Below, piece by piece: positions 4,166-63,756 of a DNA stretch of 64,000 nucleotides. Source of the stretch: Octopus bimaculoides. Taxonomy: Eukaryota. How positions within the stretch are numbered: position 1 is the first letter of the stretch; each line of letters starts with the position of its first letter. The notes beneath the pieces were generated by a model that saw nothing but the letters and a program-made list of their open reading frames with translations, did not search any database and had not been told where the DNA came from. The stretch spans positions 29,338,973 to 29,402,972 of the forward strand of contig NC_068995.1 in assembly GCF_001194135.2 (NCBI RefSeq), written 5' to 3'. Position numbers and translations under genes: made by a program.

Positions 4166-4500
4166 AGCAAAGTAGCTAGTTATAAAATCTCAAGAAGAGA
4201 TAGAGTAGTAACGTATACTAAACAGTAAAGCGAGTAGCCACATCAAAGTGGTAGATGAATGCTACTGCTAGTTTGACCCCAGGCGGATTCACCACCAGCT
4301 GGTTTTCGGTGCAAGCTCTGCACCCTTTATATACAATATATCACTAGCGGGGGTGGGGGCGAACCCCTACTAACCCCACCAGCTGACAAGATCGCGGCAC
4401 CGGCCAGTTTCGAGCTATTTGGTTCACATCAGCCGCGCGCACCTGTGCAGTGGAGTGATAGCTAAGATCCGTTTTGCCAGCGATATGAACGCTAAAATAT
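4166..4500 (-). mobile_element. Retrozyme-like HHR repeat, copy A (circularly permuted monomer)
   Basis: Aligns by eye to the copies at 8635, 28052 and 54980. It starts upstream of the hammerhead and runs into the start of the next monomer, and ends at a (TA)n tract and gap. Confidence 0.8.
4392..4438 (-). ncRNA. Degenerate type I hammerhead ribozyme
   Basis: Minus strand reads cgcgg CTGATG tgaaccaaatagctc GAAAC tggccg GTG ccgcg. Stem I is intact, but the core has lost A9 and the cleavage triplet is GUG, so it is probably inactive. Confidence 0.7.
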
Positions 4501-8395: not shown

Positions 8396-8634
8396 ATTTA
8401 TCGAATAATCTTTTCTTGGTAACGACTTCGACTGTGCTCTCCATGAGATTTTGAAGAGGCGTATGGTTTATGAGCCTTGAGAAATTTGAAACTGATAATC
8501 TCTTTACATAAAAAGTAATAAAAAAGTTCATTGTGCAAAATATTGACAAAAAAAGTTCATTGTGCAGAATATTCGCAAATGTCTCACAGAGATATCACAT
8601 ATCTCTCAGAGATATGCTAAGCATATCTCTGCTA

Positions 8635-8880
8635 GAGATATACTTTATATAAAGGGTGCAGAACTTGCACCGAAAACCTGTTGGTGGAGAATCTACCTGC
8701 GGTTAAACGAGTCGCAACATTCATCAGTCACTTTGATGTGGTTACTCGATTTACTGTTTAGCATACGTTACTACTCTATCTCTTCTTGAGATTTTATAAC
8801 TAGCTATTTTGCTTGTTGCAAATCAGTGACCGATGGTCACTTTGTTTACAATATATCGCTGTGAGCTGAATGAATTAGTG
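8635..8880 (+). mobile_element. Retrozyme-like repeat, copy B (truncated before the HHR)
   Basis: tatataaagggtgcagaacttgcaccgaaaacc...agtgaccgatggtcact...caatatatcgct is homologous to the first two-thirds of the monomer at 28056-28415. Confidence 0.8.
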
Positions 8881-15726: not shown

Positions 15727-16619
15727 GAGGTCTGATCAATAAGTATCCAGATTGTTGTTATAGTAACGAAGCTAAAGTATGCAGAGTGAAGCTGCTTGGC
15801 ATAGATTGATCTTGGACGCTACTGTGCATGCACACTCAGTTTTAACGTTTTACTTTACTTCCACTGTTTAGAGCAGTGCTTGGAAGGAACGTGTGTAGCG
15901 TGTGATCGTCACATTGACCATGACAGAGAAAGTTTTCATGGCGATACCTGCTCAGAGGCCTTCGCAAAGTTGCAAAAAGTGTATGGAGAGGAGTGTGTGA
16001 GCCGCACACAAGTGTGTGAGTGGTTCAGACGTTCCCAAGTTGGCCGAAAAAATGTCGATATTGCCGAACGTTCTGGGAGACCCGCAACCAGCAGAGCTGA
16101 GAAAAATATCGTAAATGTGCATGTAACTGTGAGGGGAAATCGTTGAATCACCAACTGTGAGTTATCAGATGTGCAGATTAGTTACGGCTTAGTTCAGTCC
16201 ATTATCACTGAAGATTCAGGTATGAGACGTGTGTCTGCCAAGTTTGTACCAAAACTGCTTTCAGCTGACCAAAACGACACGCGGATTTCAGTTGCACAAG
16301 ATCTCCTTGATTGTGTCGAGAACGATGAAAACTTTTTGAAAACTTTGGGTAGGCCGCTGAGCAGGTATCGCCAAGCTTTTGGCAAAATTTGATGCAGATT
16401 CTCTGCTCAGCTTTCTTTGTCATGGTCAATGCGATGATCACACGCTACACACCTTTCTTCCAAGTACTGCTGTAAACAGTGGATGTGAAGTAGGACGTTA
16501 AAACTTGGTGCGCATGCACAGCAGATTTCAAAGGTCAATCTGTGCCAAGCGGCTTCACTCTGAGTGCTTTAACCTCGTTACTATGACAACAGTCCCGATG
16601 CTTATTGATTAGACCATTG
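15726..16619 (+). mobile_element. Non-autonomous fold-back mariner, copy 1
   Basis: Terminal inverted repeat (TIR) CGAGGTCTGATCAATAAG at both ends. The plus arm encodes the transposase N-terminus (EWFRR...SGRP...RVSAKFVPKLL...ENDENFLKT), then switches to an inverted copy of the 5' end (MTKKAEQRICIKFCQKLGDTCS). Confidence 0.9.
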
Positions 16620-17399: not shown

Positions 17400-19610
17400 T
17401 AAAGCAGTAATCCAAATAGATGAAATGGTGATATATGATGATTTTAAGAAGAATCTTCAGCAGGTGCAAAGTCTTACAGCCGTTTCGAGAATGTGTAGGT
17501 TGAGATAGGCAAATATTTCCAACCATAACAATCATCCACATTTCTCTCATCAGAGCTAATTTAAGAGAATTTACAAAAGAGCTTTTTTTATCTTTAAAAA
17601 ACAAGAATTTTTAAAGAATTTTAAAATTCGAATGCTGTATCGAAAGAACATACTGTTCAGGCAAATGATATATAATAAGATCTGAGTTTACACGTTTAAA
17701 TAGATTATAAAACTATTGATAACAGTGTTTTAAGATGAATCCAAATGCACAATGGTAAATAGGTTAAAATCATAAACTAATTATTTTTGGAAAAAAATTT
17801 AAACGTTGATAAATATTTATGTCTACAGAGAATTTTACATCTGAAATCTTATCAAGTAAATTTTTTTAACAGTACGGAGTATATTGATTGATTCTTTTCG
17901 GCATTATTTACAATGTCTAGTGTGTGTATTGTATGGTGTGATTTTCGTTATAATGGACCAATCCAGACTGAATTTTTTATTACGCATTTTTCATTTATTA
18001 ATGTGGGTAGCTAGTGCGGTTGAGTTTTTTTTTTTTGTTTCTTGATTAATAAATGAATTTGTGTGCTCCCTATATCTAGTCTTAAAATTAGTCGTGCTTT
18101 CTATGTATACCTTCTTAGATTCATTGAGAGTTGTAACCTCAACTTTATACACGACATTTCTCCTTAAACAGAATCCCTTTAAAGGACATAAATTCCAGTC
18201 ATGGCAATTACATGTTTTATTTCCATGCTTTGCCTTTGTATTTTTATCCATTAACTTATTGTTATTCATATTGAGGCCAGCTATATTGTCATCTCTATCA
18301 ATACCATTATTCCTTAGTTTTAATCTATTATTGGTCGCAGTTATAGATCCTAGATTAGGCATAGGTTAGTACGATAATCTAAAGCAGGATCTATTAAAGA
18401 TGGGATGATATTTTTGGCCTAATGGGAAATTCCTGTCAATAATCCTGAAAAATAATTTAGGGAGATTACTGACTTGGGGAAAAAGGTGGGGTGAACCAAA
18501 TAATTTCTCGTTTCCTCAACGAATTGTTCCTAATCTGCCCAGTATAATAATTATTATTATAATTAAATGAATTACAGAGTCTTCTATTATGGTGGCGATC
18601 CTGATGCTCGGGAGGGTCGTTCACAGAAGGGGTATCAATGTCTAATTTTGCAAGATTTGGGAAAAGTTTACCTAATTTATTTTTCAATCGTGTATTCTTA
18701 ATATAATATATCTTCCTATTGAATCCACTGTCTTTCAATACTGTATTTTAAAAGGGTGCAAAGTTATAAAAAATATTTTCATTTCCATATAAGTTAGAAA
18801 TTTTTATCGACGCCCCTTTGACCACCTCATTAATAACATTTTGAGGATGACTGGACAAGGGGTGTATATATTCAATGGTTTTATTAGGCTTATGGTAAGA
18901 ATAAAATAAGCCATTGTCTTAATTTAATGTTACGTCCAAAAGATTAACACGTTTAGCGATGTTTTCAAATAGAATGTCTAAGTTATATATCTTAAAAAAT
19001 GTTATTAGTCTTTTCCTTATCCTATCAATCGCTTGTAAAGAAGTGTCAGAAATAGCTAATAACGCATCATCTCTATACAAACATCTGCTGATATTAGGGA
19101 ATTCTTTCTTAATTTTCGAAAGTAAAAATAGACCAACAATATCAGTGACCTGGACAGAATCCAAAGATCCCATTGTAACATCTAAGTCACCTTGAAGGTC
19201 ACATCGGGTTCAGGTTCTATTTCTGAAAGATATTAGTGTTTTCCTTGCAGTAAAAATATTATCTTTCTCTAAAGGTGTAATATCAGTAAAATTCTCAGGA
19301 AAAGCAACTACTTTATCAAGCAGGTCCAGCTTAATAGATTGATAGTAATTGCTAATGTCGAATTGGACAAAAATGAGTTTTCCTTTTATTATTCAGTGAG
19401 CAAAACCAAGTTATGACGAACCCCGTAGAAATCTAAAGCGGTAGGTCTACATTTATTTTAATGCAAGTGATGATTCTATCAATGATAGACTTACTAATTC
19501 TGCCCAAGTCAGATTTAGTTGGACAGATTAGCCTAACAGCGGGTTTACTCTCAAAGTTTGCTTTGTGATCCTTAAATCCTTAAATTACTGCGTATATGAT
19601 GAAGGGGATC
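17400..19610 (-). mobile_element. Penelope-like element, Hydra-clade type (RT + C-terminal GIY-YIG), frameshifted
   Basis: Motifs in order: KDHK..F...VRLICPTKSDLGRISK; VQFDISNYYQSI; DVTMGSLD; LYRDD; IIWFTPPFS; CNCHDWNLC (CxCx5C); VVYKV...VYIESTTNFKTRYREH; C-terminal CRH. A hammerhead lies in the 3' UTR. Confidence 0.9.
17471..17557 (-). ncRNA. Type I hammerhead ribozyme with extended stem II
   Basis: agct CTGATGA gagaaatgtg...ggttg...caacc...cacattctc GAAAC ggct GTA agac. Confidence 0.8.
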
Positions 19611-19619
19611 GCTGGCAAG

Positions 19620-20810
19620 TTATTTTTTAAAAACCGTTAATAGATTTCACGTCAAAGGCAATCTAGAGAAAGAGAAGGGGGAGAAAGAAAGAAATTAACA
19701 GAAAATTAACAGTGTGATAGATGAATGGGAATAAAACTTAAAAGCCTGGAAATAGATATATGTAGTGGAAATGAAATGCAAGAAGACAGTTAATGGTCGA
19801 ATTTTATAGATTGGTAGAAATTACTTATAGGAACTAAAGGTATATTTTTGCCAATGTTTGCAACGACAAACGCGTTCTTTAAACGTGTTTACAAGAGAAT
19901 TCTCCGAGAACAGGAGATATTGTTCTTCGTTACAGAGCGGATAAAAAGATTTGCCTTTATCATATGGGAAGAATCTAGATAGAATATTCCATTCCAAATC
20001 AAATTGTTTATTATGTTCCTTTAAAGACCAAATTAATTTACTAAACCCAGTATTGTTGTGTTTATTGATATGTCTAAATGCAGAGTAATGGTTAGATATT
20101 CTTTTCGACAACTCAGATGAAGAACTACCTAAGTAAATAAAGACATCACAACCTGAAGTAATTTTACATTGATAAACAGAATTTCTAGTCTTAGAATTAC
20201 TGCTAAGGAAACGAATACGATTCAAATTTATATCAGAAATACTAATATTGTTGTTATTATTATTCAAAGAATGGTTAGTGTTAATAATATCAATGTTATT
20301 ATTTTCATTAAGTGGATTTGTATTTAACAACTTATTGTTATGCGAAGAGATGATTTGTGAAAGGTTTTTGGAGTTTGAAAACCTTATTCTAATTCGGCGT
20401 GAATTGATAATGGAATAGTATTTTGGGGAAATTCTTATCTATAGCTTCACGAAACTGATAAGGGAAGCTGGATTTGATCTGCTTACCATATCGAATTATC
20501 AACCAAAGTGTTTTATTTGGACATACCTTGTCATTAGGGTATTTATTTTTAAAAGTCCTAGATTTACTTTTATTACGTATAAAGGGACTTAAAGAACCGT
20601 TATCTCCCTTACACTGCAAAACTACATTTTTCGATTTGGTGTTGTTATTCGAACTAACATCTATATTGTTATTACCGTTATGACGTGTTTTCCTGTCCTG
20701 ATTAACAGAGGTAGAATTAATGTCAATAGGGTTAACATAGGTATTTTTTCTTTATAGCCTACTTTAAGTAAGGCAGAGTTATAAAATTCGGCTTTATCGT
20801 CATAGTCCTC
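19620..20810 (-). mobile_element. Second, divergent Hydra-type PLE 3' portion (thumb end, linker, GIY-YIG, 3' UTR)
   Basis: AEFYNSALLKVGYKEKI; LWLIIRYGKQI...FREAIDKNFPK; NLSQIISSHNNKLL; NSVYQCKI...IYLGSS..LSKRISNHYSAF...EWNIL...LCNEE...CRCKH. Confidence 0.85.
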
Positions 20811-22046
20811 CAGGCAACAATAGATGAATTCAAGACAGGATGCCCCTAGGAGCTCCTCTATGTTGATGACCTTGCTCTAAAAGCTGAGTCACTACCAGAA
20901 CTAGAGATGAAGTTTCAGGTGTGGAATCAAGGCCTGGAATTGAAGGTCTTAGAGTCAATGTAGCAAAAACCAAAGTCTTAGTAAGTAGGAAGGCAGACAA
21001 ATCACAAATCCCTTCAGGTAGATGGCCCTGTTCGATCTGTAGAAAGGCGTAGATAGAAACTCCATAAGATGTACACAGTGTAAGCTATGGACACATAAGA
21101 GGTGCCATAATTTCAAAGGAAGGTTAGCTAGGAAGATAGATTTTGTGTGTGGCAAATGCACAGGGGCAATAAATACTGAAAATGTGCAGAAAACAGCTTC
21201 CATCACAGGTTAAGAGAAAAAACTAGTAGTTGATAGCTTCCGTTACCTACGTGTCCAAGTCAGTAGTTGGGGTAGATGCTCTGAGAGCGTAGCTGCTAGA
21301 ATAAGGACAACCAGGGCAAAGTTCAGAGAGCTCCTACCTCTGCTGGTAACAAAGGGCCTCTCGCTCAGAGTGAAAGGTTGACTGCGAACAGTCATGCAAC
21401 ATGGCAGTGAAGCATGGGCTGTGACTACTGGATGTGCAATGTCAGTCTGCATACACGACAAAGTGTAAGCACCCTGAGAGAAAGGTTGGACATAAGAAGC
21501 ATCAGATGTGGTGTACAAGAGAGACGATTGCGCTGGTATGGTCATGTGTTACATATGGATGAGAACAGCTGTGTGAAGAAGTGTCACACCCTAACAGTGA
21601 AGGTAACCTGGATTGAGGTGGTGAAGCACAACCTTTGAACGGTGGGCCTCACGGCGGCAATGACAAGCAACCAAGACCTTTGGAGATATGCTGTGCTTGA
21701 AAAGACCCTGCAAGCCGTGGCCTATGCCAGTGTCACAAAACCGACCCATTTAAGAGCACCCTTCAATCGTCGGGCAATATACTGTGCTTGAGAAGACCTG
21801 TTGAGTCAAGTGAAATTCTTGTCGTGGCTGATGCCAGTACCGCCTGACTGGCTCCCGTGCCGGTGGCACACAAAAAACGCCCACTACACTCTCGGAGTGG
21901 TTGGCGTTACGAAGGGCATCCAGCCCTTGCCAGATCAGATTGGAGCCTGGTGCGGCCTCCTGGTTTAACAGCCATCAGTCAAACCGTCCAACCCATACCC
22001 GCACGGAAAGCAGACGTTAAATGATGATGATGATGATGATGATGAT
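20811..22046 (+). mobile_element. 5'-truncated RTE-clade LINE with (GAT)n tail
   Basis: ELLYVDDLAL...GLRVNVAKTK; FRYL; ARIR..RAKFRELLPLL; RLRWYGHVLHMDENSCVKK; the 3' UTR ends in atgatgatg at ~22020-22046. Confidence 0.92.
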
Positions 22047-28051: not shown

Positions 28052-28510
28052 GATACCTGCTAACAATATATTGTTTATAAAGTATGCAGTGTCGCACTGG
28101 TAACCAGCTGGCGGAGAATCTGCCTGGGGTTAAACTAGTAGTAACATTCAACAACCACTTTGATGTGGCAACTGACTTTACTGTTTGCTATAGTTACTAC
28201 TCTGGTCTCTTCGTAAGATTTTACAACTCGCTATTTTCCTTGTTGCAAATCAGTGACCGATGCTCACTTTGTTTACAATATATCGTTAGTGTTAGCGGAC
28301 TCTGGCTATCGCTCTGGCGTACACGTGCTCGCGACTGAGGATAAACCAAATAGCTCGAAACTGCGCCAGTCTCGCGATCCTGATACCTGCTAGAGGGTGG
28401 TAGGAGTTCGCTCCCCCTGCTAACAATATATTGTATATAAAGGGTGCAGTGTCTCACCGATAAGCTAAACTAGTAGTAACTGACAACGGCCACTTTTATG
28501 TGGCGACTTT
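28052..28510 (+). mobile_element. Retrozyme-like HHR repeat, copy C (~1.25 tandem monomers, period 360 bp)
   Basis: The direct repeat cctgctaacaatatattgt.tataaag..tgcagtgtc occurs at 28056 and 28416, with a hammerhead at 28329-28377. Confidence 0.88.
28329..28377 (+). ncRNA. Type I hammerhead ribozyme (stem II mutated)
   Basis: tcgcga CTGAGGA taaaccaaatagctc GAAAC tg cgc ca GTC tcgcga: 6-bp stem I, 4-bp stem III, GUC triplet. Confidence 0.8.
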
Positions 28511-28563
28511 ACTATATATATTGGTTTTGGTGTTCATGATAGATCGAAGTGTCAGTAAAGACT

Positions 28564-29638: not shown

Positions 29639-30650
29639 GAGACAGACAGACAGGCAAACAGACAGACAGACAGGCAAACAGACAGACAGACAGGCAAACA
29701 GATAGACAGACAGAGAGAGTGAGTAAAACAAAGAGAGAGCGTAGAAAGACAGTTGATAAACCTAGAGGGATAAAGTGATTTAGTAAGAAGTAAATGAGAG
29801 AGAGGGAGAGAGTGGAGAGAGAAGTAAAGAGAGAGAGTATGTGTAAAGGAGAAATGAGGAAGGGTTGAAGATGAAGAAATAAAGAAATCAGGATGAAAGG
29901 AAAAAAGAATGTGAGAATTAGCTTTGGAAAATAGACTGACTTAACAACGAAGCCCTAGAATGAGATTGCTAAGTATGTATGTATGTATGTATGTATGTGG
30001 GTGGGTGGGTGGTTGGGTGGGTGGGTAGGTAGGTAGGTAGGTAGGTNNNNNNNNNNGTAAGTAGGTAGGTAGGTAAGTAGGTAGGTAAGTAGGTAGGTAG
30101 GTAGGTAGGTAGGTAGGTAGGTAGGTAGGTAGGTAATAACCTACCTACCTACCTACCTACCTACCTATTCGTAAATATTAGTAAGATATAATCCGTTTCA
30201 ATGTGTTACATGATCGGGTCATTAGTGATGAAACCAGCAAATAGACGAAGGTTGCTAGAAATCCAACAAGAGAAAAACAAGACCTGTGAAAAGGATGGCT
30301 CAACCTTGTAAAGGGTCATCAACTGGCTAACTATAGTGAGCGAGGGCATTACTGGTATAAGTGTATGCTTAACGTTTCAGATCAAGAATTGAAAACACAT
30401 TGCAATAAAAAAAAAGCCTATAATTATATATATGATTGTGTAAATGAGTTTTCCTTAATAATTAATAAAAAGAGTGAAACCACAGGTAAGTAATGAGAAG
30501 ACGTGTGTTCTCCAGCCACCGTGAAAACAACTTGTCAAAATGAGGATCAGCCAGAATAAAATCGTGGTAGTTCAAGCTAATGTGTTCTTTGATCTGCGAT
30601 AAGATCGAGTAAGGCAATGTGGTGCTCTGAAAGCCTTATATTCTTTTCAT

Positions 30651-34639: not shown

Positions 34640-36850
34640 TTTCGTTCGTGCCATATCAATTCCAGAGGATCCATGCTGCTTGTAATTATCTTCTTTGGAG
34701 TCAATCTCAGATCCTACTAAAGGAAACAATCTGGGAAATGTCCAGTTACAGAGGTTCTGTTACCCTACTCAAACTGCTCGGCATTATGTTAGCAGTAGTA
34801 GCTGCCATTCTCCAACTGGTGTAAACAATTCTCCAGGCGTTGGTGTAAGCAACCCTCCAACTGTTGGTGTAGGTAACTCACCAACTGTTGGTTAATGTGA
34901 CGGGTCGGTAGCAGTAACAACAACTCTCCAACTGGTGGTGGTGGTGGTGGTGGTGGTGGTGGTGGCGGCGCATATTATGGTGTTCATTGCAGCCGCAGTG
35001 ATGTTTTCATAGGAGCTGACTTCGATCGACTGTTAATTTTCTTTTTAGTGGTGTTGCTACATCTGGTCAGGTGCTAACGGAAGGAAGACGCGTTGGAGTA
35101 AAACGTGGAGTGGTCGTAATGCGTTACTGATGTAGTAGTTGTTGCATTTGGAGCATCGTATTTGGTATACTACGCACGTACGTAGGCATGTGTTAGTGTT
35201 GCGAATGGGACAGTTCGTTAGTCTGCAGGGTCGTTGTTTTTGCACGTACCCACCTCGTTGTTAAGTGTTACGTAGGGACGGTCCTGAATGGGCCAGTAGA
35301 ACATTGTGCCCTTCCCTCCGGATAGCCTTGTAAATGGTAGAAGTGGTCTTCTCTTTGAAGTGGGGAATCTTCAAGAAACAGGTCTTAGAAAGATCCCTCT
35401 TGCGATGTTTAACTGGCCTGCTTTCGCGTACAGAGTTAGTAATGGACATTCAATATCTGTTGGCTTCAAGTACCTTTAGGAACTGAGTAATATGTGCGTC
35501 CTGCTTGGTGATGTCACTGCATCTTTTGTGTAACCGGGCGATCTCATAAAGTACGTAGATCATTTTAGCCAATTTTCTGTAGAACATTGTGTTAATTTTT
35601 CCCTCGTTCGTGATGTTTAGCCGAGAGTCAAGCAAGAGAAGAAGAATCATCGCTGTTTGGATGTTGGATGATGAAGCTAATATGTTGTTCCAGCTTGTTG
35701 AAATTCTCTAGTATAGTAGAGGTGTCCTCTTGGGATGGAGTGAGCATGAGGATGTCGTCCACATACATGGAAGGAAAAGCGTATGAGTGGCGGGTACTGA
35801 GTGCCCTATGCTATAGTCGGTCTAAGTAAGCAATAGCGAGCAGGCCTGAGAGGCTGGATCCTATAAGCAGGCTTGAACACTATTTATACGTGTTGCCAAA
35901 CAAGCTGAAATGAGTGGTGATAACTATAACTAATAGTAACTGGTGAATGCCGAAACAGTGTAAGTTCGAGAAAGCGACACATTCCGAGATTAGGTCGACT
36001 GCAGGAGGGGCAGGAACCGAGGAGTATAGGGAGACCATGTCTAAAATGAAAGAACATTTGTTGCATCTGAATATGTCGGGTTCGACCCGGAAAAATCGAC
36101 AGTAGGGTTTATAGGATCCTGGATAGGAGCCACGGGATTTTGTAAAATGATCCCTCTATGCAGAATACTATGGGTCAGATGTGGAGGTCAGGTCCCTGTT
36201 TATGCGTCTTGATGAGATGGTAAAATGTAGGCACTCTACTGTTGCACGTGGTGAAGTTCCTTTTTATCTTAGCAGGGAGTTTACACCGGTTACAGACGTT
36301 GATCAGGTCTTCCAGTATGGTTGCAATGACTTCAATGGTTTTAACTGTTGTTGTTAAGGTGCTGGAATGCTAAATTGTCATATGTGTGCTGTGTAATGAC
36401 ACAAAATTCTCTGCTTTGTCGGAGGGGAGGTAGACCATGTTCTTCGGCCTAAGTTTTTTTAATATAGAGTATTGTTGATCGGAATTGAGCCGGTGGCTCC
36501 TATGAAAACATTACGGCGACTGCAACGGACACCATAATATGCACCACCACCACCTTCGCCACGTGATTATACGTCGTAGCAACCAATAGTTGGAGAGTCG
36601 CCTACACCAACAGTTGGAAAGTTTGCTGCTACTGTTGCTAGCCCATTACATCAACCAACAGTTGGTGAGTTACCTACACCAACAATTGAAGGATTGCTTA
36701 CACCAACGCGGAGTGATTGCTACTACTACTACTAACATAATGCCGAGTAGTTTGAGTCGGGTAACAGAACCTGTGTAACTAGACATTTCCCAGAGTGCTT
36801 CCTTCTGAGGATGGGCTTTTACGCCTGAAATATAAAGATTTTGTAAAACT
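34640..36850 (-). mobile_element. Penelope-like element (Nematis-like), degraded, with inverted pseudo-LTR
   Basis: VYLPSDK; PTFYHLIKTHK...IRPIV; MYVDDILML; FLKIPHF; C..TNCPI.NTN.CLRTCVVYQIRCSKCNNYYI. A ~340-bp region at 34700-35012 is repeated inverted at 36496-36800. Confidence 0.88.
36802..36837 (+). ncRNA. Minimal (dimer-type) hammerhead ribozyme in the inverted pseudo-LTR
   Basis: ctt CTGAGGA t GGGC ttttac GCCT GAAA TATA aag: palindromic ATAT stem III, AUA triplet, ctt/aag stem I. Confidence 0.8.
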
Positions 36851-37214
36851 TTCCACATTGTCAGAAGCTTTCTTATTTTCCCTTTTCTTTCTCTTGTTCG
36901 GTACTACAATGCTTCAAGCGAACTACAACGCTCTTGTACACACACACACACACACACATATGTATATATATATATATATANNNNNNNNNNNNNNNNNNNN
37001 NNNNNNNNNNNNNNNNNNNNNNNNNNNNNNNNNNNNNNNNNNNNNNNNNNNNNNNNNNNNNNNNNNNNNNNNNNNNNNNNNNNNNNNNNNNNNNNNNNNN
37101 NNNNNNNNNNNNNNNNNATATATATATATATATATATATATACTCAAATATGAAATAGAATGAGCACTAGTGTAGTAAACATTATCAACCACACATACTT
37201 AACGTAGAAAGAGC

Positions 37215-37845
37215 CTGTGTTTGCCTGTGGGTTGCGATTAGCGTGGTGAAGATTATTCTCTCAAAGCGCCGGGTGTTAAAACACCTGAAAGTCATGGACA
37301 GGTGAGACAACTCACTCAAAATTCCATTCAGGAATGATGGTTAGCGATGTTTTGCCATTATTGTGGTTTATGAACATCGATACCCGAACCAAATTTGAGA
37401 CGAATCGTACAGATTTTGGGTGAGTTTTCTCGCTTGCCCATGACTTTCAAGTGTCTTAATACCTAGCGATTTGAAAGAGTAATCTCCAACATGCCAGTTC
37501 GCAGCCTACTGGCAAACACGCTTTTCTTGTATGTCAAGTATGTGTGGTCAATGATGTTATTACTCTAGCGCTGCTTCTATTTCATATTTCGGGGCATACC
37601 AACATATAATTCTTACACTATATGCATATAAGTCATGGACTGGCGTTACGATTCACCCTCGATTCGGTTCGGAGACGTGATGTTGATAAGCCACAAAAAT
37701 GGTGAAACATCGATGTCCATCACTCCTGAATGAGATTTTGAATGAGTTGTCTCGCCTGTCCATGAGTTGCAGATGTTTTAACACCAGGCATTTTGAGAAA
37801 GTAATCTCCACCACACCAAATCACAGCCTACCAGCAAACACAAAA
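37215..37845. mobile_element. Fold-back/MITE-like element with ~195-bp inverted arms and a third internal partial arm
   Basis: 37215-37408 is the diverged reverse complement of 37645-37845, and 37420-37510 repeats the right arm. Confidence 0.8.
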
Positions 37846-37898
37846 GTCGTGTGCGTTATGTCAGTGTGATCGATAAAGTTTACACACACACACACACA

Positions 37899-53305: not shown

Positions 53306-53476
53306 CTTTATGCATGTATGTATGTGTGTATGTATGTATGAATGCATGTATGTATGTATGTATGTATGTATGTATCTTCAATTTTTTAATTATTATAAAT
53401 CCTCCACTGAGAAGGGAGCCGTTCTCTAATAAAGATACAAGGCTCCATCTTTGGGATGTAGTTAACACAAACAAAT

Positions 53477-54312
53477 TCACATTTGGAACTTGAGATAAGT
53501 TTTGCATATTTTTACTGTTCCACTCACAGATTGGACTTGTAATGTACGAATTAGCCGGTCAGTTTCTCTTTCTGAGAATCCCAGTTTATCCAGATTCTCC
53601 TTTAAGCATTTACTAACAAAACTTAGTGGTCCAATTATTATTGGTATGAATACGAATTCATAGTCTGGGTATAGAAGCTGGAGCTTTCGAAGCAGTTGTC
53701 CATATATATCCTCTTTCTCACTAATTTTCATTGAGATATTTATATCTGCAGGGCAGCTGACCTCTATGATGGTACATATCTTTGCTCCTCTGTCCCAAAC
53801 AACAATATCCGGCCGGTTATGCTTACAGTTGACAGAAGTTTTGATGGGAACATTCCACCAGTATTCCTTGAGTTGGTGTTTATGAATGTATTCCATAACA
53901 GAGAGATTTTCTAAGTTTATTTCAGGACAATCTTTCTTGTGGATAGCATTGTAAATTGTTTTACCAACAACACCGTGCCGCGTAAGGAGGTGGTACTGTG
54001 ACGACATTTAGGACAATTGCTAATCGCATGCATCATGTCTTCCACAGAAACATGACATAGCCCACACATGCGGTTGCACCTTGGGATTACAAGAGTGTCA
54101 CTCTCTCTTGTTCACCAAGTATTTTGTGACAATTTCTTGTTCCTGGATTGCAAACGCATAGCCTTCAAAGTGTGATGTGATGCAGTGATCTGGTGTCGAA
54201 GAGAGGCTGTGCTTTGTATCAATTCTACTGTCTTCTTCAAGCTTCCGGGCAACATACCCATGTATGGTCTTTTTTTTTTTTTGCATGCTCAGTGCTTTCC
54301 ATCCAGGTTGTA
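53477..54312 (-). mobile_element. R4/Dong-type LINE 3' part: CCHC knuckle and REL endonuclease
   Basis: HFEGYAFAIQEQEI; CGLCHVSVEDMMHAISNC; RHGVV; HNRPDIVVWD...IIEVSCP...KEDIY; open frame over 53477-54007. Confidence 0.9.
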
Positions 54313-54432: not shown

Positions 54433-54779
54433 TACACGAATATATATACATACGCATATATATATATGTATGTGTGTGTGTGTGTGTGTATACACGTACA
54501 CACATACACGTATGAATATTTATATAAACGTATGTGTATGTATGTGTGTGTATGTGTGGGTAGGTATTTATGTGTGTGTGTGTCTGTGTGTGCGTGCGTA
54601 TGTGTGTATGTGTATACATGCATACATACACATCTATTTAGTATGTATTTCATGTACAGATACATGGTCATCCCTGACTGATGAAAGTGTTCATGTGTGT
54701 GTGTGCATGTTTATGTATGTATGTATGTATGTATGTATGTATGTATGTATGTATGTATGTACGCATGTATGTATAATTA

Positions 54780-54957
54780 CGTGTGGGTGCTGAAAAGTTC
54801 CTGATTCTGGGTAAAAGAAAATACAGAAAGATTGGTTATGATTTTATTCAATATATACCTGTTTTTTTAAAGTCCTATAAGAGAACTCAGAAGGTTGAGA
54901 CTCCAACCAGGCATTTCGTGAGACGCTTAAAGCCTGGAACTTTTCAGCACCCACCCG
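54780..54957. mobile_element. Mariner-type MITE (178 bp)
   Basis: TIRs CG.GTGGGTGCTGAAAAGTTCC / GGAACTTTTCAGCACCCAC.CG with TA on both sides. Confidence 0.9.
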
Positions 54958-54979
54958 TATGTATGTTTATAAATAAATA

Positions 54980-55480
54980 TAGCAATATATATTGTATATA
55001 AAGGATGCGGCGTAGCACCGATAACCAGCTGGCGGAAGATCTGTCTGGGGTTAACATGGAACAGCTACTTTCATGTAGCGATTGACTTTACTTGTTAGTG
55101 CAATTACTACTCTCATCTCTTTTCGCTTGTTGCAAATTGGTGACCGATGGTTACTCTGTTGACATTATATCGCTGGCTGGAGCAGACCCTGGCTATCGCT
55201 CTGCTAACCAAGTGTTCGTGACTGAAGATGAGCCAAACAGCTCGAAACTGAGTCAGTCTCGCCGTCATGTTGTCTGCTAGAGGATGGTAGGGGTTCGGTC
55301 TCCCTGCTGGCAATATATATTGTGTATAAAGGTTACAGCTTTGCACGGATAACCAGCTGGCGGAAGATCTACCTGGGGTTGAACTAGTAGTAACATGGAT
55401 CAGCCACTTTGATATGGCGCTTGACTCTACTTGTTGGTATAGTTACTACTTTGATCTCTTCTTGAGATTTTACAACTATG
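54980..55480 (+). mobile_element. Retrozyme-like HHR repeat, copy D (~1.5 tandem monomers, period 328 bp)
   Basis: The direct repeat gcaatatatattgt.tataaagg...gataaccagctggcggaagatct occurs at 54982 and 55310, with a hammerhead at 55216-55263. Confidence 0.9.
55216..55263 (+). ncRNA. Type I hammerhead ribozyme, best-preserved copy
   Basis: tcgtga CTGAAGA t GAGC caaaca GCTC GAAAC TG agt CA GTC tcgc; predicted cleavage after C55258. Confidence 0.88.
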
Positions 55481-56899
55481 TTGTATTTATAAACAGATTA
55501 GGCACTTGTTCGTCTGGAATAAGTGAAGTGATATAGATACCTCTGAAGGGAACTCATTAAGGTTCGAAAATCGATTAAGCCTGAACATTATTTTATTTCT
55601 AACAACGAAGATATAGTTAATTTTTTCCTGTTTGTATGTCTACTACGTAAGTCGNNNNNNNNNNATATATATATATACATATATATATATATACACATGC
55701 ACATATGTGTATTAAAAAAGAAACTATCTAAAAATATAGGCGTAAACCGGCTTTGTGTGTAGTTTAAGGAAAACTGCTAAAATTAACCGAGAAATTAAGA
55801 AAATGAGACTATTAATTAGTTTTTCAAGTTATCTGCCATATAAGTGCAACTCGATAAATATTATTTGTTTTATGAATTATTAACTGATGTTCACATTAAA
55901 TGATTAAAAACACATGGAAAAGCTTTAAACAATCTTATAAAGGAGTGTGGTGTGCAAACAATTACTTTACTATGTCGCTTGGATGAATTTATTTGGCGCC
56001 AATTATACGAAAATTATACTAGGAAAAACCTATGCAGCCATATTTCCAATTGTTATCCCCTGAACCGAATACATAAACATTTATTAAACTATACGTTGAA
56101 CTGAATAAATAAACAACATATGTGTATATAAGCAAAGTTTTCTGTTGTTCTTTCTTCGTTAAATTCTAGCAGTTACACTTTCCAGAAGTTCTCTGTTGAT
56201 TTTATCGATTTTCATTACACCTTCATTTTTCTCAGGTACTCAATATTACAAGACCACAGATCGAAGTCTTATGAAATCTCATGATATTTGTATTTAGTAT
56301 GAATACTCACAGAAATATTTTGTCTCAGGTGTATCATTAGACACAAAAATGACGCGCGAATGTATACAGAGGGCAGAGAAATGTACATGTACAAATGTAT
56401 ATGCACACACACATATACACGTGTACAACATTCATAAATACATTCATGCAAGAATATATTTACTTATCAATAAAGGGAGTACATCAATGTACATACAATG
56501 AAATTAACATATTTCAAGTCAGTGAAGAACTAAAAGGGTATAGTCTGAGTGTACAGCTGTTTCGGGTGATCCGAGGATAACTGGACTAAAGTACTTAAAT
56601 ATAAATTTATGCATTAATACACATCCTACAATTTAGAGGATGCCAACATTGACTGGAAGAGCAGACTCTCCTAATCATTTGATGGATATTATGTCACATC
56701 CCACATAGGAGGATAAGCATTTGCTATTCGAGAATAATTAATGCTTACTGAATAATTAATCAATAAAAGAGATACTCCAATAAAAGAGATAATCAATAAA
56801 AGAGACTACTCCAAATTTCCATTTGTGATAGAATTACCAAAACCAGCTACAATCATGCTAAACATACATCAGAATCAGAATGTAAAGACAGATTTTAAA

Positions 56900-57789: not shown

Positions 57790-57857
57790 CACACACACAC
57801 ACACATATATAAATATATTATATATATATGCGTATACATGTATGCATATATGTATGT

Positions 57858-57916
<59 letters not shown>

Positions 57917-60807: not shown

Positions 60808-62051
60808 CGGGTCTTCTCATAGGTAATGTTTAGATTTTAAATAAGGAAAATAAGTGATCAAATTTTACATTTTAATGAAACTTAATTGTCAATATAGTTT
60901 CCATAATTATCCATGACATCTTTACATCTACGCGTAAGCTTTTTAATTCCATTAGTCCGAATAGAAGAACCCTGGAAGGTCAGTTTTGACTTACTCAGTT
61001 TTTACCAGAGTTAATCGATCCAAATGATTCTGTAAACTACGGAACAGATGATATTCTGAAGGAGCAAGGTCTGGGGAATAAGGTGGATGAGTAATTTCCT
61101 CCCAGCCAAGTTCCTCTCCTGTGACGTGATCTTGCATTGTCCTGATGAAACACCACTCTCTTTCGATTCATTAAAGCAGGCCTTTCTTCTTCAAAGTAGC
61201 GTTCAAACGCTCTAATTGCTGACAGTAGATTTGAGTATTGATTGTTGCATTAGTTGGTAGCAACTCAAAGTGGATGACTCCTTTGAAACCCCACCAAACA
61301 GAGAGAACCTTCTTCACATGGAATTCCCTTTCCGCTTTTGGCTGAGCCTTTTCCCCTTCAAGCCAATATCAACGATGTTTAACATTTTGATAAAAGCCCC
61401 ATTTTTCATCACCGGTCACCAGTCTGTCCAAAAGGGGCAAGATGAGTTCACGAGAACGAAGAGAAGAGCAGAGGTCTTCTCGTGATTTGCGGTTGGCTCC
61501 AGACAAATCATGAGGCACCCATTTTCCGAGTTTTGTGACCTTTCTTAGCTGTTGAAGATGGCGGTGAACAGTTGTATGGCTTGAACGAAGCTTGCTTGCC
61601 AATTCATCAACTGTAATTGCATGATCTTTTTCAAGTTCTGCCAAAAGGAGCTTGTTATCAAACTCAATTAGGTGTCATGTTCGGGCCTCATTTTCAAGGC
61701 TGAAATCTCCACTTCTGAATTTTACAAACCATCTTCTGCAAATTCTTTCATTCAGGCATCCTTCTGCATAGGCTGAGTGAATATTTCGAGCTGCTTCAGC
61801 TACAGAATTTCCTTCTTTAAACTCATAAATCACAATGTGCCTCAAATGCTCTTTAGGCACTTCCAAGTTTGAAGAGCTATTATAATTAGGGAAATTTCAA
61901 TTAGATTACTCTGCAAAATGAAATTTGATTCGTTTAAATATTCCATATTCACAAAGAATATTATTTGATGCCATTAGACATTCTAAAATACTGTTAAAGC
62001 TTTTACAAACTGAAAATATAGAAGTTCGGACATTATTTATAGATGACCTGA
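60808..62051 (-). mobile_element. Near full-length mariner (DD34D), inactivated
   Basis: MEVPKEHLRH...WFVKFRSGDFSLE; GKWVPHDL; LVTGDEKW; FHQDNAR; HPPYSPDLAPSEYHLF. Diverged TIRs (ggtcatctataaataatg / ggtcttctcataggtaatg); about 1.24 kb. Confidence 0.9.
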
Positions 62052-62818: not shown

Positions 62819-62989
62819 CATCATCATCAGCAGCAGCAGCTGCAGCATAATAACAACAACAACAACAACAACAACAATAATGATAATAATAATTTAAAAG
62901 GATTAACGTAAGTCCCTACAAATGTAAATAGACAATACGAAGAGCGCGAAACGAAATTCGAGACATAGTTACTTCAGTAACATTCAAAT

Positions 62990-63625
62990 ACCAACATGGT
63001 CATGAATCAATATTCTGGTTACGGTTCACTGATGACGTTTTTTTGTCTGGGAAGGATCACAGGATAGTTTCATTGACCTCTTGCATTTCTGTGACCGTTA
63101 TACTAAAATTTACGTCTAGTTTTTCAAAAACTAGCGTTGAATTTTTGGACACAAAAATTAAGTTTTCTGGAGGCAGAATAGTGACAGTTATTTTGCAAGC
63201 CCACGCAATCCCACATTTACCTCCACCGCCGCTCCGATCATCCACATCATATAGTTCGGTCAAATCCGAAATCACAACTTTTGAGGATAAAACTGATTTG
63301 TACTGATATAGGGGATTACTGGAAGCATGCAAATGCTTTTGTACACCAGTGAGTCAGGATTGCAAATGACATAGCTAAGATTAGCAAAGGAAGTTAAACG
63401 TCTACGCATAATTTTAGAAAACAAAGTACCATATGTGACAGAATTCCTTTACTAATTAACTGGCACCGAAATTTTGCTGGCATTTCAAAAGTGTTACATG
63501 AAAGTTGCCAGCATGTTGCAGAAAAATATCCTCATTTCAAACATATATTTCCTCAGCTGCCTATTGTAGCCTTTAGGCGAAATAAAAATATAAGAGAACT
63601 ATTAATCTCTACTTCTGACAATACA
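62990..63625 (+). mobile_element. Penelope-like element (Neptune/Poseidon-like) RT-thumb fragment
   Basis: FWLRFTDDVFFVWEG; VEFLDTKI; KPTQSHIYLHRRSDHPHH; PIVAFRRNKNIRELL. Confidence 0.8.
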
Positions 63626-63712
63626 GTTCTATATTTAAGAGATGCGGAATTATGTACATTACTTACATTATTTACATTTGACGGGTATTTGTCCACATTT
63701 TGTTTGTTGTTA

Positions 63713-63756
63713 ACACAATGTTTCAGCTGATATACCCTCCAGCCTTCATTAGGTGT
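63713..63756 (-). ncRNA. Degenerate minimal hammerhead ribozyme
   Basis: acac CTAATGA aggctg gagggtata tcagct GAAAC att gtgt. The core G5 is mutated and stem III is decayed, while the stem I acac/gtgt pairing is intact. Confidence 0.6.

What the first reader, a model, noticed from the sequence alone, without database searches (positions are those of the whole stretch)
54980..55480. A retrozyme-like family: non-coding ~330-360 bp tandem monomers carrying a hammerhead ribozyme, four copies in 64 kb
Seen: the same monomer occurs at 4166-4500 (-), 8635-8880 (+), 28052-28510 (+) and 54980-55480 (+). Two copies are 1.25-1.5 head-to-tail monomers (periods 360 and 328 bp), three contain a type I hammerhead, and none has coding capacity. 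Known: metazoan non-LTR retrozymes are short tandem HHR-bearing monomers whose transcripts self-cleave into unit-length and circular RNAs, and they are thought to borrow PLE reverse transcriptases. Inference: this is a high-copy retrozyme family in a cephalopod, with PLE partners in the same window. I do not recall it being described in octopus but cannot confirm novelty.
Basis: partly seen in the sequence, partly recalled or inferred. Interest (0 to 1): 0.88.

Follow-up and report, generated by a model that had tools for sequence, protein, structure and literature searches.

The report
Decayed hammerhead-ribozyme retrozyme-like repeat family
Four old, non-coding copies of a ~360-base mobile repeat descend from an element with a genuine hammerhead self-cleaving ribozyme, so this looks like a previously undescribed member of the known animal "retrozyme" class, but no copy here could still make RNA circles and no such RNA was found.

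Summary
One ~330-360 bp unit occurs four times: 4166-4486(-), 8630-8861(+), 28052-28513(+) and 54983-55478(+). Two copies run 1.25-1.5 units head to tail, and no frame is open.

The hammerhead claim is only partly right. No copy reaches an Rfam gathering score. Only the 55222-55258 copy keeps a full core; the 28335-28371 copy has a broken helix II and the 4432-4398 copy is dead. However, the majority letters of genomic reads restore a canonical type I hammerhead: 6-bp helix I plus internal loop, 4-bp helix II with loop CAAAUA, and one extra U between A9 and G10.1. A strict descriptor found it once in the window and never in 200 shuffles. The consensus unit folds far better than shuffles (z about -8).

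Copies share no flanks, tend to sit in TA-rich microsatellites, and share start and end points. A degenerate Penelope-like element lies at 17994-21548. A second hammerhead repeat family lies at 37146-37880.

This fits the metazoan non-LTR retrozymes of Cervera and de la Pena (2020). Not shown: arrays with two ribozymes, self-cleavage, or unit-length or circular RNA. The RNA-seq examined gave only background. Verdict: an old, probably inactive new member of a known kind, of modest interest.

The parts
54983..55478 (+). Copy 4 of the family. Unit 1 is 54983-55310 (328 bp, with two small internal deletions relative to the 360-bp consensus). Partial unit 2 is 55311-55478.
   Evidence: blastn, sequence, alignment. 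Reads from other copies diverge from this copy at 55478 (loose ends).
55205..55279 (+). Hammerhead of copy 4. Core and helices II/III span 55222-55258. Predicted cleavage is between 55258 (C17) and 55259. The core is intact; helix I is reduced to 4 pairs including one G-U.
   Evidence: Rfam HH9 18.1 bits. Descriptor hit, with 0 of 200 shuffles. Pair counts.
28052..28513 (+). Copy 2. The full 360-bp unit is 28066-28425 and the partial second unit is 28426-28513, with an internal deletion. It is flanked by (TA)n on both sides. It is the window copy closest to the family consensus.
   Evidence: Its 3' end corresponds to unit position about 28183, a terminus also seen genome-wide in reads (loose ends at 28168-28183).
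28318..28392 (+). Hammerhead remnant of copy 2 (core 28335-28371). Helix II is broken (AAAC/GCUC). The majority of genomic reads have G at 28343 and 28345, which restores GAGC/GCUC.
4166..4486 (-). Copy 1, a permuted 0.9 unit. It starts in mid-unit, runs through the ribozyme and the unit junction, and ends at ...CTACTTTGCT, next to (TA)n and an assembly gap. This is the same 3' end as copy 4.
4378..4452 (-). Dead hammerhead of copy 1. A9 is lost, position 17 is G, and helix II has a mismatch. It keeps both parts of helix I and shows one compensatory change (1.1-2.1 is C-G instead of U-A).
   Evidence: Rfam HH9 23.4 bits over model positions 1-77. Pair counts.
8630..8861 (+). Copy 3, 0.65 unit. 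It has the same 5' start region as copies 2 and 4 and ends before the ribozyme.
17994..21548 (-). Context: a degenerate Penelope-like element in partial tandem. It comprises a GIY-YIG endonuclease remnant (20438-19824), then RT motifs (19392-18922), a linker (18747-18469) and a second endonuclease (18365-17994). It shares no sequence with the repeat unit.
   Evidence: Pfam GIY-YIG E 0.076. 137 homologues of 570-800 aa, best E 5e-43. blastp layout against P0001, P0010 and P0033.
37146..37880 (+). Related but separate: a second hammerhead-bearing non-coding repeat. The period is 322 bp (37411/37733), with an inverted partial copy at 37146-37378. It is flanked by (TA)n and (CA)n. The hammerhead is at 37665-37739 and has a U3-A8 core.
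   Evidence: Rfam HH9 36.7 bits, E 1.2e-5 for the whole window. Repeats. Read depth about 640 on the ribozyme module.

Best explanation
These are four decayed insertions of one family of short (unit about 360 nt), non-coding, non-autonomous retroelements. The ancestral unit carried a canonical metazoan type I hammerhead ribozyme and folded into a strongly self-paired RNA. That makes it a retrozyme-like element of the kind described in other invertebrates.

Inferred life cycle, by analogy with that class: master copies with at least two units are transcribed, the hammerheads cut out unit-length RNA, and a host ligase may circularise it. A Penelope-like RT/GIY-YIG enzyme then copies multimeric or circular RNA into TA-rich microsatellite targets. 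This would give insertions of less than 1 to about 1.5 units with permuted ends.

Shown here:
- the repeat family and its partial tandem layout;
- the hammerhead in the family consensus;
- the lack of coding capacity;
- the predicted fold;
- unrelated flanks;
- shared start and end points and TA-rich flanks;
- a PLE remnant nearby.

Inferred, not shown: self-cleavage, circular RNA, the identity of the mobilising enzyme, and present-day activity.

The window copies themselves are fossils. Each holds at most one ribozyme, and only one of those is intact.
For: 1. Four homologous copies with unrelated flanks.

2. Majority letters of genomic reads laid on copy 2 restore helix II (28343 and 28345, A to G) and give this consensus: CGCGA-CUGAGGA-U-GAGC-CAAAUA-GCUC-GAAA-CUG-AGU-CAG-UC/UCGCGA. 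Helix I is 6 bp, then an internal loop, then 5 bp (ACAGG/CCUGU). On the named structure, 88% of cells pair against 26-36% when the partners are slid, and there is one compensatory change.

3. The descriptor hits the window once and 0 of 200 shuffles. The consensus passes it with a 6-bp helix I.

4. The 6-bp helix I and 4-bp helix II match the 'canonical metazoan HHR' described in PMC4209133. [quoted passage not shown]

5. The consensus unit folded as a circle has MFE -141.8 kcal/mol against -94.9 +/- 5.9 for shuffles. The real copy 2 has z -3.7 with dinucleotide shuffles.

6. No ORF is present and no tRNA-like head was found.

7. Two copies exceed one unit. Three start within about 15 bp of the same unit position, and two share one 3' end. 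The third 3' end coincides with a terminus seen genome-wide. Flanks are (TA)n or TA/CA-rich. PMC8557442 reports partial tandems and (TA)n targeting for PLEs.

8. A PLE remnant lies in the window.

9. Size (about 360 bp), the co-occurrence with PLEs and the self-paired fold agree with the mussel and other invertebrate retrozymes in PMC7229834. GC content (45.6%) is borderline against the paper's <45%.
Against: - No Rfam hammerhead model reaches its gathering score, and family-1 hits are not significant at whole-window scale.
- No copy in the window has two ribozymes, so the defining 'tandem of ribozyme-bearing monomers' is not seen here.
- RNA-seq reads (three runs) and RNA contigs (four runs) show only low depth in both orientations. 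Fragments are embedded in 0.5-2 kb transcripts, no ends pile up at 28371/2 or 55258/9, and no abundant unit-length contig exists. These libraries may be poly(A)-selected and so blind to small circles.
- Copies are 70-78% alike and most reads are under 90% alike to the window copies, which suggests the family is long inactive.
- The local MFE of the ribozyme region favours an alternative pairing of CUGA with UCAG.
- Covariation support rests on four sequences and is not statistically significant (58 of 500 shuffles reach it).
- The read-derived consensus is biased towards copies that resemble copy 2.
Confidence: 0.62

Rival explanations
1. A SINE-like non-autonomous Penelope-type element that moves as an ordinary linear transcript. 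The direct repeats are pseudo-LTRs made by the PLE integration mechanism. The hammerhead is a passenger inherited from a PLE terminal repeat, and no circular RNA is involved.
For: - Three copies share one 5' start region and there are two preferred 3' ends. An insertion therefore looks like repeat-internal-repeat with a single internal ribozyme.
- Non-autonomous PLE derivatives with pLTRs and head-to-tail insertions are described in PMC8557442.
- No circular or unit-length RNA was seen.
Against: - The unit shares no sequence with the PLE in the window.
- The ribozyme has full-size helices I, II and III and an internal loop in helix I, unlike the minimal PLE variants.
- The very strong self-pairing of the whole unit is expected for retrozyme or viroid-like RNA and is not needed for a linear template.
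- The two models overlap, and sequence alone cannot separate them.
Confidence: 0.25
2. Solo or 5'-truncated terminal pieces (pseudo-LTR or 3' end) of a long autonomous PLE or LTR element, not a short element in its own right.
For: Hammerheads are typical of PLE terminal repeats, and a PLE remnant is present in the window.
Against: - A period of 328-360 bp with the whole unit traversed without interruption in two copies means the repeating element is itself about 360 bp.
- None of the four copies adjoins coding sequence or any shared flank.
- Beyond the termini, genome-wide reads continue into heterogeneous sequence (agreement 0.4-0.56), not into one common body.
- The PLE at 17994-21548 has no similarity to the unit.
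Confidence: 0.06
3. An ordinary dispersed or satellite-type repeat in which the hammerhead-like motif is a chance resemblance with no ribozyme history.
For: Rfam scores are far below gathering, two of the three motif copies are defective, and no cleavage evidence was found in RNA.
Against: - The descriptor hit 0 of 200 shuffles.
- The read majority repairs the defects rather than adding to them.
- The helix I architecture aligns with model positions 1-77 of HH9.
- A second, unrelated repeat in the same window carries another hammerhead of the same architecture at 36.7 bits, E 1e-5. This shows that such elements are a feature of this genome.
Confidence: 0.05

Closest known systems
Metazoan non-LTR retrozymes (Cervera and de la Pena 2020, PMC7229834), in particular the ~350-390 bp units of the mussel Mytilus galloprovincialis
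   Same: Unit size (about 360 bp), a type I hammerhead in each unit, no coding capacity, head-to-tail arrangement, a highly self-paired predicted RNA, and PLEs in the same genome (GC 45.6% is only borderline to the class's <45%).
   Different: Only partial tandems (up to 1.5 units) are seen here, and never two ribozymes in one copy. Copies are old and mostly defective. No linear or circular unit-length RNA was detected in the RNA data available, whereas mussel circles reach high levels. Sequence homology to the mussel units could not be tested because no sequences were at hand.
Penelope-like element hammerheads and pseudo-LTR insertions (Cervera and de la Pena 2014, PMC4209133; Craig et al. 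2021, PMC8557442)
   Same: [quoted passage not shown]
   Different: There is no RT/EN ORF in or beside the unit. The ribozyme has full helices (6-bp helix I plus internal loop, 4-bp helix II, 4-bp helix III) rather than the minimal form. The unit shares no sequence with the PLE in the window.
Rfam Hammerhead_HH9 (RF02275) and, from memory only, the Schistosoma Sm-alpha type I hammerhead
   Same: The same layout: outer helix I, internal loop, 6-bp inner helix I, CUGANGA, 4-bp helix II with an A-rich 6-nt loop, GAAA, short helix III, and GUC (alignments). Loop 2 is CAAAUA, which I recall as identical to the schistosome ribozyme; this was not checked with a tool.
   Different: Scores of 18-23 bits are well below the 52-bit gathering score, so this is not a member by Rfam's criterion. 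HH9 is an intronic vertebrate motif, not a repeat unit.
Plant LTR retrozymes (Cervera et al. 2016, PMC4918200)
   Same: Non-autonomous, ribozyme-bearing, thought to make circular RNA, and bounded by direct repeats.
   Different: Plant elements carry type III hammerheads inside true LTRs, with a PBS and PPT, and are mobilised by Gypsy elements. Here there is one type I ribozyme in the non-repeated middle, and no PBS or PPT was looked for or seen.

Membership tests
Hammerhead ribozyme (type I) | Conserved core C3 U4 G5 A6 N7 G8 A9 ... G12 A13 A14 ... A15.1-U16.1, with H17 not G | tested here: met
   The core is complete in copy 55222-55258 and in the read-derived consensus. It is defective in the copies at 28335-28371 (helix II only) and 4432-4398 (A9 lost, G17). 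One extra U follows A9, a position where extra residues occur naturally.
Hammerhead ribozyme (type I) | Three helices around the core with helix I open, supported across sequences | tested here: met
   19 pairs in 4 helices. 88% of cells pair, against 26-36% with slid partners. There is one compensatory change. Covariation is not significant with only four rows.
Hammerhead ribozyme (type I) | Reaches the curated Rfam gathering score of a hammerhead model | tested here: not met
   No hit at gathering. The best scores are HH9 at 18.1 and 23.4 bits against 52.
Hammerhead ribozyme (type I) | Site-specific self-cleavage | tested here: inconclusive
   No excess of read ends at 28371/2 or 55258/9 in three RNA-seq runs, but depth was only about 10-25 and the copies are decayed.
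Metazoan non-LTR retrozyme | Short tandem repeats (150-450 bp) from dimers to multimers, each monomer with a type I hammerhead | tested here: inconclusive
   The unit size fits (328-360 bp). Only 1.25-1.5-unit partial tandems occur, with one ribozyme each. Genome-wide arrays could not be surveyed.
Metazoan non-LTR retrozyme | No coding capacity, and no LTR, PBS or PPT | tested here: met
   Stops in all six frames of the consensus trimer. No Pfam hits in ORFs around the copies. PBS and PPT were not specifically searched.
Metazoan non-LTR retrozyme | Highly self-paired unit RNA and low GC (below about 45%) | tested here: met
   Consensus circle MFE -141.8 against -94.9 +/- 5.9 for shuffles, with 69% of bases paired. 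GC is 45.6%, which is borderline. Copy 2 has z -3.7 and copy 4 has z -0.6.
Metazoan non-LTR retrozyme | [quoted passage not shown] | tested here: inconclusive
   Only background-level fragments inside longer transcripts. The libraries are 'RNA-Seq cDNA' of unknown selection, and no rRNA-depleted run could be listed.
Metazoan non-LTR retrozyme | Autonomous PLEs in the same genome | tested here: met
   RT plus C-terminal GIY-YIG remnant at 17994-21548(-), E 5e-43 to 570-800 aa homologues. That this PLE mobilises the unit was not tested.
Autonomous Penelope-like element (as pLTR or solo fragment) | The unit is contiguous with an RT/GIY-YIG coding body | tested here: not met
   Flanks of all four copies are unrelated to each other and to the PLE. 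Read continuations beyond the termini are heterogeneous.
tRNA-derived SINE | A tRNA-like head with A and B boxes | tested here: not met
   ARAGORN finds nothing in the window. The GGGGUUCGCCCC segment is a simple tetraloop hairpin without a suitably spaced A box, judged by eye on the sequence.

The most novel reading that the evidence does not exclude
This genome harbours several undescribed retrozyme families; at least two are in this one window, one with the U3-A8 covariant core. Some master arrays are still active and produce circular RNAs. The shared 5' start, the two preferred 3' ends and the lengths above one unit in the dispersed copies would then record PLE-mediated reverse transcription of multimeric or circular ribozyme RNA, primed at TA microsatellites. 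That would be direct genomic evidence for a retrozyme integration mechanism that has so far only been proposed.
Probability: 0.15. Interest if true: 0.6.

Novelty: new member of a known kind. Interest (0 to 1): 0.35.

Why it matters
Retrozymes are the proposed source of most type I hammerheads in animal genomes and of a ribozyme-based route to circular RNA. They are documented experimentally in only a few animals: a coral, a mussel and the axolotl.

A cephalopod family, if the origin is confirmed, would extend that list. It would also offer many dated insertions whose ends could be used to infer how Penelope-like enzymes copy these RNAs.

As it stands, the finding is an annotation-level addition: an old family whose copies here are inactive. 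It is not a new mechanism.

Tried and rejected
It was redone with an optional insert.
- TRF does not report the 328/360-bp periods.
- Pfam scans of 20 ORF segments in three apparent coding clusters gave no hits (19.8-21.5 kb, 33.2-36.4 kb, 53.1-54.7 kb). The cluster just upstream of copy 4 is microsatellite-derived, so copy 4 is not attached to coding sequence.
- Pfam alone barely sees the PLE (GIY-YIG E 0.076). A homology search was needed.
- The local Pfam copy did not reproduce the PF26215 and PF28514 labels of the homologues.
- A relaxed core pattern near the PLE gave only chance-like hits (49 in the whole window), so no hammerhead could be assigned to that PLE.
- tRNA-SINE idea: rejected.
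- The bacterial promoter/terminator scan is irrelevant to this genome.
- A search for rRNA-depleted RNA runs returned none.
As a result, the planned check of whether copy 2 is orthologously present in the related 'organism B' (0.42 of its words are held by run X14) was not done.
- RNA reads on the second family showed no ends at 37717/8.
- Literature searches for retrozyme or hammerhead together with octopus or cephalopod found no description of such a family. They found only a count of 235 Rfam 'hammerhead 1' hits in the giant squid genome paper.

Full report
OBSERVATION

The sequence at 54983-55478 is a direct repeat with a 328-bp period. blastn of the first unit against the window finds three further places and nothing else:
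- 28066-28421 (72% over 356 bp, E 4e-55), followed by the start of a second unit at 28426-28463;
- 4486-4360 plus 4341-4195 on the minus strand;
- 8638-8706 plus 8807-8861.

A MAFFT alignment puts all pieces in one register with a consensus period of 360 bp. Unit 1 of the 55-kb copy has lost about 32 bp. The copies are 70-78% alike. TRF misses the repeats because each has fewer than two full periods.

THE HAMMERHEAD

The Rfam gathering scan of the whole window finds no hammerhead. Permissive scans of the individual copies give:
- Hammerhead_HH9 at 18.1 bits for 55218-55262;
- 23.4 bits over the full model for 4450-4378(-);
- nothing for the 28-kb copy.

The gathering score is 52 bits, so the motif is not a member by Rfam's criterion.

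Read directly, the 55-kb copy is GUGA-CUGAAGA-U-GAGC-CAAACA-GCUC-GAAA-CUG-AGU-CAG-UC/UCGC. The core is complete, with C17 at 55258. The 28-kb copy has AAAC instead of GAGC in helix II. The 4-kb copy has lost A9 and has G at position 17. The 8.6-kb copy ends before this part of the unit.

A descriptor was scanned on both strands. It required the core, an optional one-base insert after A9, helix II of at least 4 bp, GAAA, helix III of at least 3 bp, UH, and helix I of at least 4 bp. It hits the window once (55222-55258) and never in 200 dinucleotide-preserving shuffles.

FAMILY CONSENSUS FROM READS

Raw genomic reads of two runs of the same organism were laid on the 28-kb copy at 80% likeness or more. 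Depth was about 100-170 over the ribozyme part and 560-820 over 28090-28170, against about 1 on the unique flanks. On the 55-kb copy the ribozyme part reaches about 190-260. The family therefore has at least hundreds of members.

Most reads are under 90% alike to the window copy, so the family is old.

The majority letters differ from the 28-kb copy exactly where its ribozyme is broken:
- 28343 and 28345 are G in most copies, restoring GAGC/GCUC.
- 28364 and 28366 give the AGU loop seen in the 55-kb copy.

The consensus is CGCGA-CUGAGGA-U-GAGC-CAAAUA-GCUC-GAAA-CUG-AGU-CAG-UC/UCGCGA. Beyond the 6-bp inner helix I there is an internal loop (GUGC opposite U) and a further 5-bp helix (ACAGG/CCUGU).

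On the three window copies plus this consensus, the named structure pairs in 88% of cells, against 26-36% when the partners are slid. There is one compensatory change (U-A to C-G at 1.1-2.1). With four rows the covariation is not significant.

The 6-bp helix I and 4-bp helix II are what Cervera and de la Pena (2014) call the canonical metazoan type I hammerhead. [quoted passage not shown] An extra A at that position is tolerated in a viroid hammerhead (PMC1636495).

One caveat: the local minimum-energy fold prefers pairing of CUGA with UCAG. Helix III is short and nearly palindromic, so activity may need a dimer, as in many animal hammerheads. This is inference.

THE UNIT AS A WHOLE

- The read-corrected 360-nt consensus has stops in every frame, even read around the circle.
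- Its GC content is 45.6%.
- Folded as a circle it gives -141.8 kcal/mol against -94.9 +/- 5.9 for shuffles. A long stem joins the region after the ribozyme to the region before it.
- The real 28-kb unit still has z -3.7 with dinucleotide shuffles. The more decayed 55-kb unit has z -0.6.
- No tRNA-like head is present.
- A TATATAAAG motif is conserved at all six unit starts. Whether it is a promoter is unknown.

HOW THE COPIES SIT IN THE GENOME

The 2-kb flanks of the four copies share nothing with each other next to the unit. None adjoins coding sequence.

Copies 2, 3 and 4 start within about 15 bp of the same unit position (CTGCTA-ACAATATATTG). Copy 2 possibly starts only about 8 nt after the cleavage site, if a 26-bp deletion between two CTGCTA repeats is assumed.

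Copies 1 and 4 end at the same point (...CTAYTTTGCT). Copy 2 ends at the position equivalent to 28183, where many genomic reads also leave the unit into heterogeneous sequence.

Copy 2 lies inside a (TA)n tract and copy 1 ends on (TA)n. Reads leaving the 28237 terminus run into TA/CA-rich sequence.

Partial tandems, defined 3' ends and (TA)n targets are properties of Penelope-like element integration (PMC8557442). Three copies run through the cleavage site without interruption and two exceed one unit, so the templates were multimeric or circular RNA rather than cleaved monomers. This is inference.

No copy contains two ribozymes, so none could release a unit-length RNA.

PLE IN THE WINDOW

On the minus strand, 20438-19824 encodes a GIY-YIG endonuclease remnant. 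It is followed by RT motifs (LYRDDAL, LLDVTLN; 19392-18922), a linker with IIWFTPPFS (18747-18469) and a second endonuclease (18365-17994).

A read-through of these pieces finds 137 proteins of 570-800 aa, with a best E of 5e-43. blastp shows the layout RT then C-terminal EN, with the first EN belonging to an upstream tandem copy. Pfam alone gives only GIY-YIG at E 0.076.

It is degenerate and shares no sequence with the repeat unit. No hammerhead could be assigned to it. 'PLE in the window' is therefore true, but 'partner' is unproven.

RNA

Three RNA-seq runs were examined, with about 1.8-1.9 Gb read from each. They give depths of only about 5-25 over the ribozyme part, in both orientations, at roughly 0.05-0.2 of the DNA depth from the same amount of sequence. 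No pile of ends appears at 28371/2 or 55258/9. The loose ends point to a few specific loci inside longer transcripts.

Logan contigs of four older RNA runs contain only fragments within 0.2-2 kb contigs at depth 2-50. No rRNA-depleted run could be listed.

This is no evidence for abundant unit-length or circular RNA. It is also not strong evidence against it, since library selection is unknown and the reference copies are decayed.

A SECOND FAMILY

The permissive whole-window Rfam scan shows one clear hammerhead that the finding did not list: 37665-37739(+), HH9 at 36.7 bits, E 1.2e-5.

Its core reads UUGAUAA, that is U3 and A8 instead of C3 and G8. This covariation is already reported for schistosome PLE hammerheads. 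It has a 6-bp helix I, a 4-bp helix II and a perfectly palindromic helix III (ACAUCGAUGU).

It lies in a different non-coding repeat with a 322-bp period (37411/37733). An inverted partial copy sits at 37146-37378, and the whole is bracketed by (TA)n and (CA)n. This is the classic PLE insertion layout.

Genomic depth is about 640 on the ribozyme module and 10-70 on the rest of the unit. No majority change appears at the U3 and A8 positions. RNA reads show no ends at the predicted site.

This supports the general picture that this genome carries several hammerhead-bearing short retroelements.

COMPARISON AND NOVELTY

Cervera and de la Pena (2020) define metazoan non-LTR retrozymes as tandem repeats of about 170-400 bp that carry type I hammerheads. 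They are non-coding, low in GC, highly self-paired and expressed as linear and circular RNA. They coexist with PLEs, and the paper reports them in cnidarians, a mussel (350-390 bp units), the axolotl and, bioinformatically, several other phyla.

The present family meets the structural criteria, with GC content borderline. The requirement for tandem ribozymes and the requirement for expression were tested, with inconclusive results.

Full-text searches found no description of such elements in octopus or other cephalopods. They found only a count of 235 Rfam hammerhead hits in the giant squid genome paper.

The taxon of the window could not be verified because organism labels are coded.

I rate it a new member of a known kind, old and probably inactive. 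It is of modest interest, with some added value from the insertion-end pattern and the second, U3-A8 family.

Noticed in passing
37146-37880 (hammerhead 37665-37739, +): A second, unrelated non-coding repeat with a 322-bp period. It has an inverted partial copy and is bracketed by (TA)n and (CA)n. Its hammerhead scores better (HH9 36.7 bits, E 1.2e-5 window-wide) and its core has the U3-A8 covariation. The ribozyme module is about 10-60 times more abundant in genomic reads than the rest of the unit.
   Followed up: partly
17994-21548 (-): A degenerate Penelope-like element in partial tandem, in the order EN, then RT-linker-EN. Homologues are 570-800 aa proteins with RT followed by a C-terminal GIY-YIG domain (best E 5e-43).
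   Followed up: partly
54800-54973 and 55525-55590: A different and much more abundant repeat flanks the 55-kb copy on both sides. Genomic depth is 600-1700 against about 1 on unique sequence. Reads join 54808 and 54930 on opposite strands, and it is relatively well represented in RNA. The retrozyme-like copy may have inserted into or beside it.
   Followed up: no
28090-28170 (and equivalents in the other copies): This ~85-bp segment of the unit has about 5 times the genomic read depth of the rest, with recurrent boundaries near 28094 and 28182. It is either better conserved or shared with another, more numerous short element.
   Followed up: partly
30116-30157; many sites such as 57821-57891 and 54456-54524: The only Rfam gathering hit (IBV_D-RNA) lies on a (GGTA)n/(TACC)n palindrome. 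All the mir-297, mir-466 and mir-3149 hits from the permissive scan lie on TG/TA microsatellites. These are artefacts.
   Followed up: yes
15805-16444 (+) and 61040-61896 (-): Mariner-type DNA transposon remnants. HTH_48 scores E 1.4e-6 at 15805-16143, and transposase-like translations are visible at 61040-61896.
   Followed up: partly
62932-63727 (+); 35631-35810 (-); 21411-21635 (+): Further retroelement-like ORF fragments: RFTDDVF..VEFLDT and ..VAFRRNKNIRELL running to the window end; YVDDIL with RVT_1 at E 0.11; and a LINE-like RLRWYGHVLHMDE tail. None was confirmed by a significant match.
   Followed up: no
28076-28084, 28436-28444, 54996-55004, 55324-55332, 4325-4317 (-), 8646-8654: A TATA-box-like TATATAAAG (or near variant) is conserved at the start of all six units of the family, about 60 nt downstream of the predicted cleavage site. 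It could be an internal promoter, or simply part of the long stem.
   Followed up: no
2411-2727 and 53347-53665: A 319-bp repeat (73% identity) lies about 1.3-1.4 kb from copies 1 and 4. Its orientation relative to the unit is inconsistent between the two, so it is judged unrelated.
   Followed up: partly
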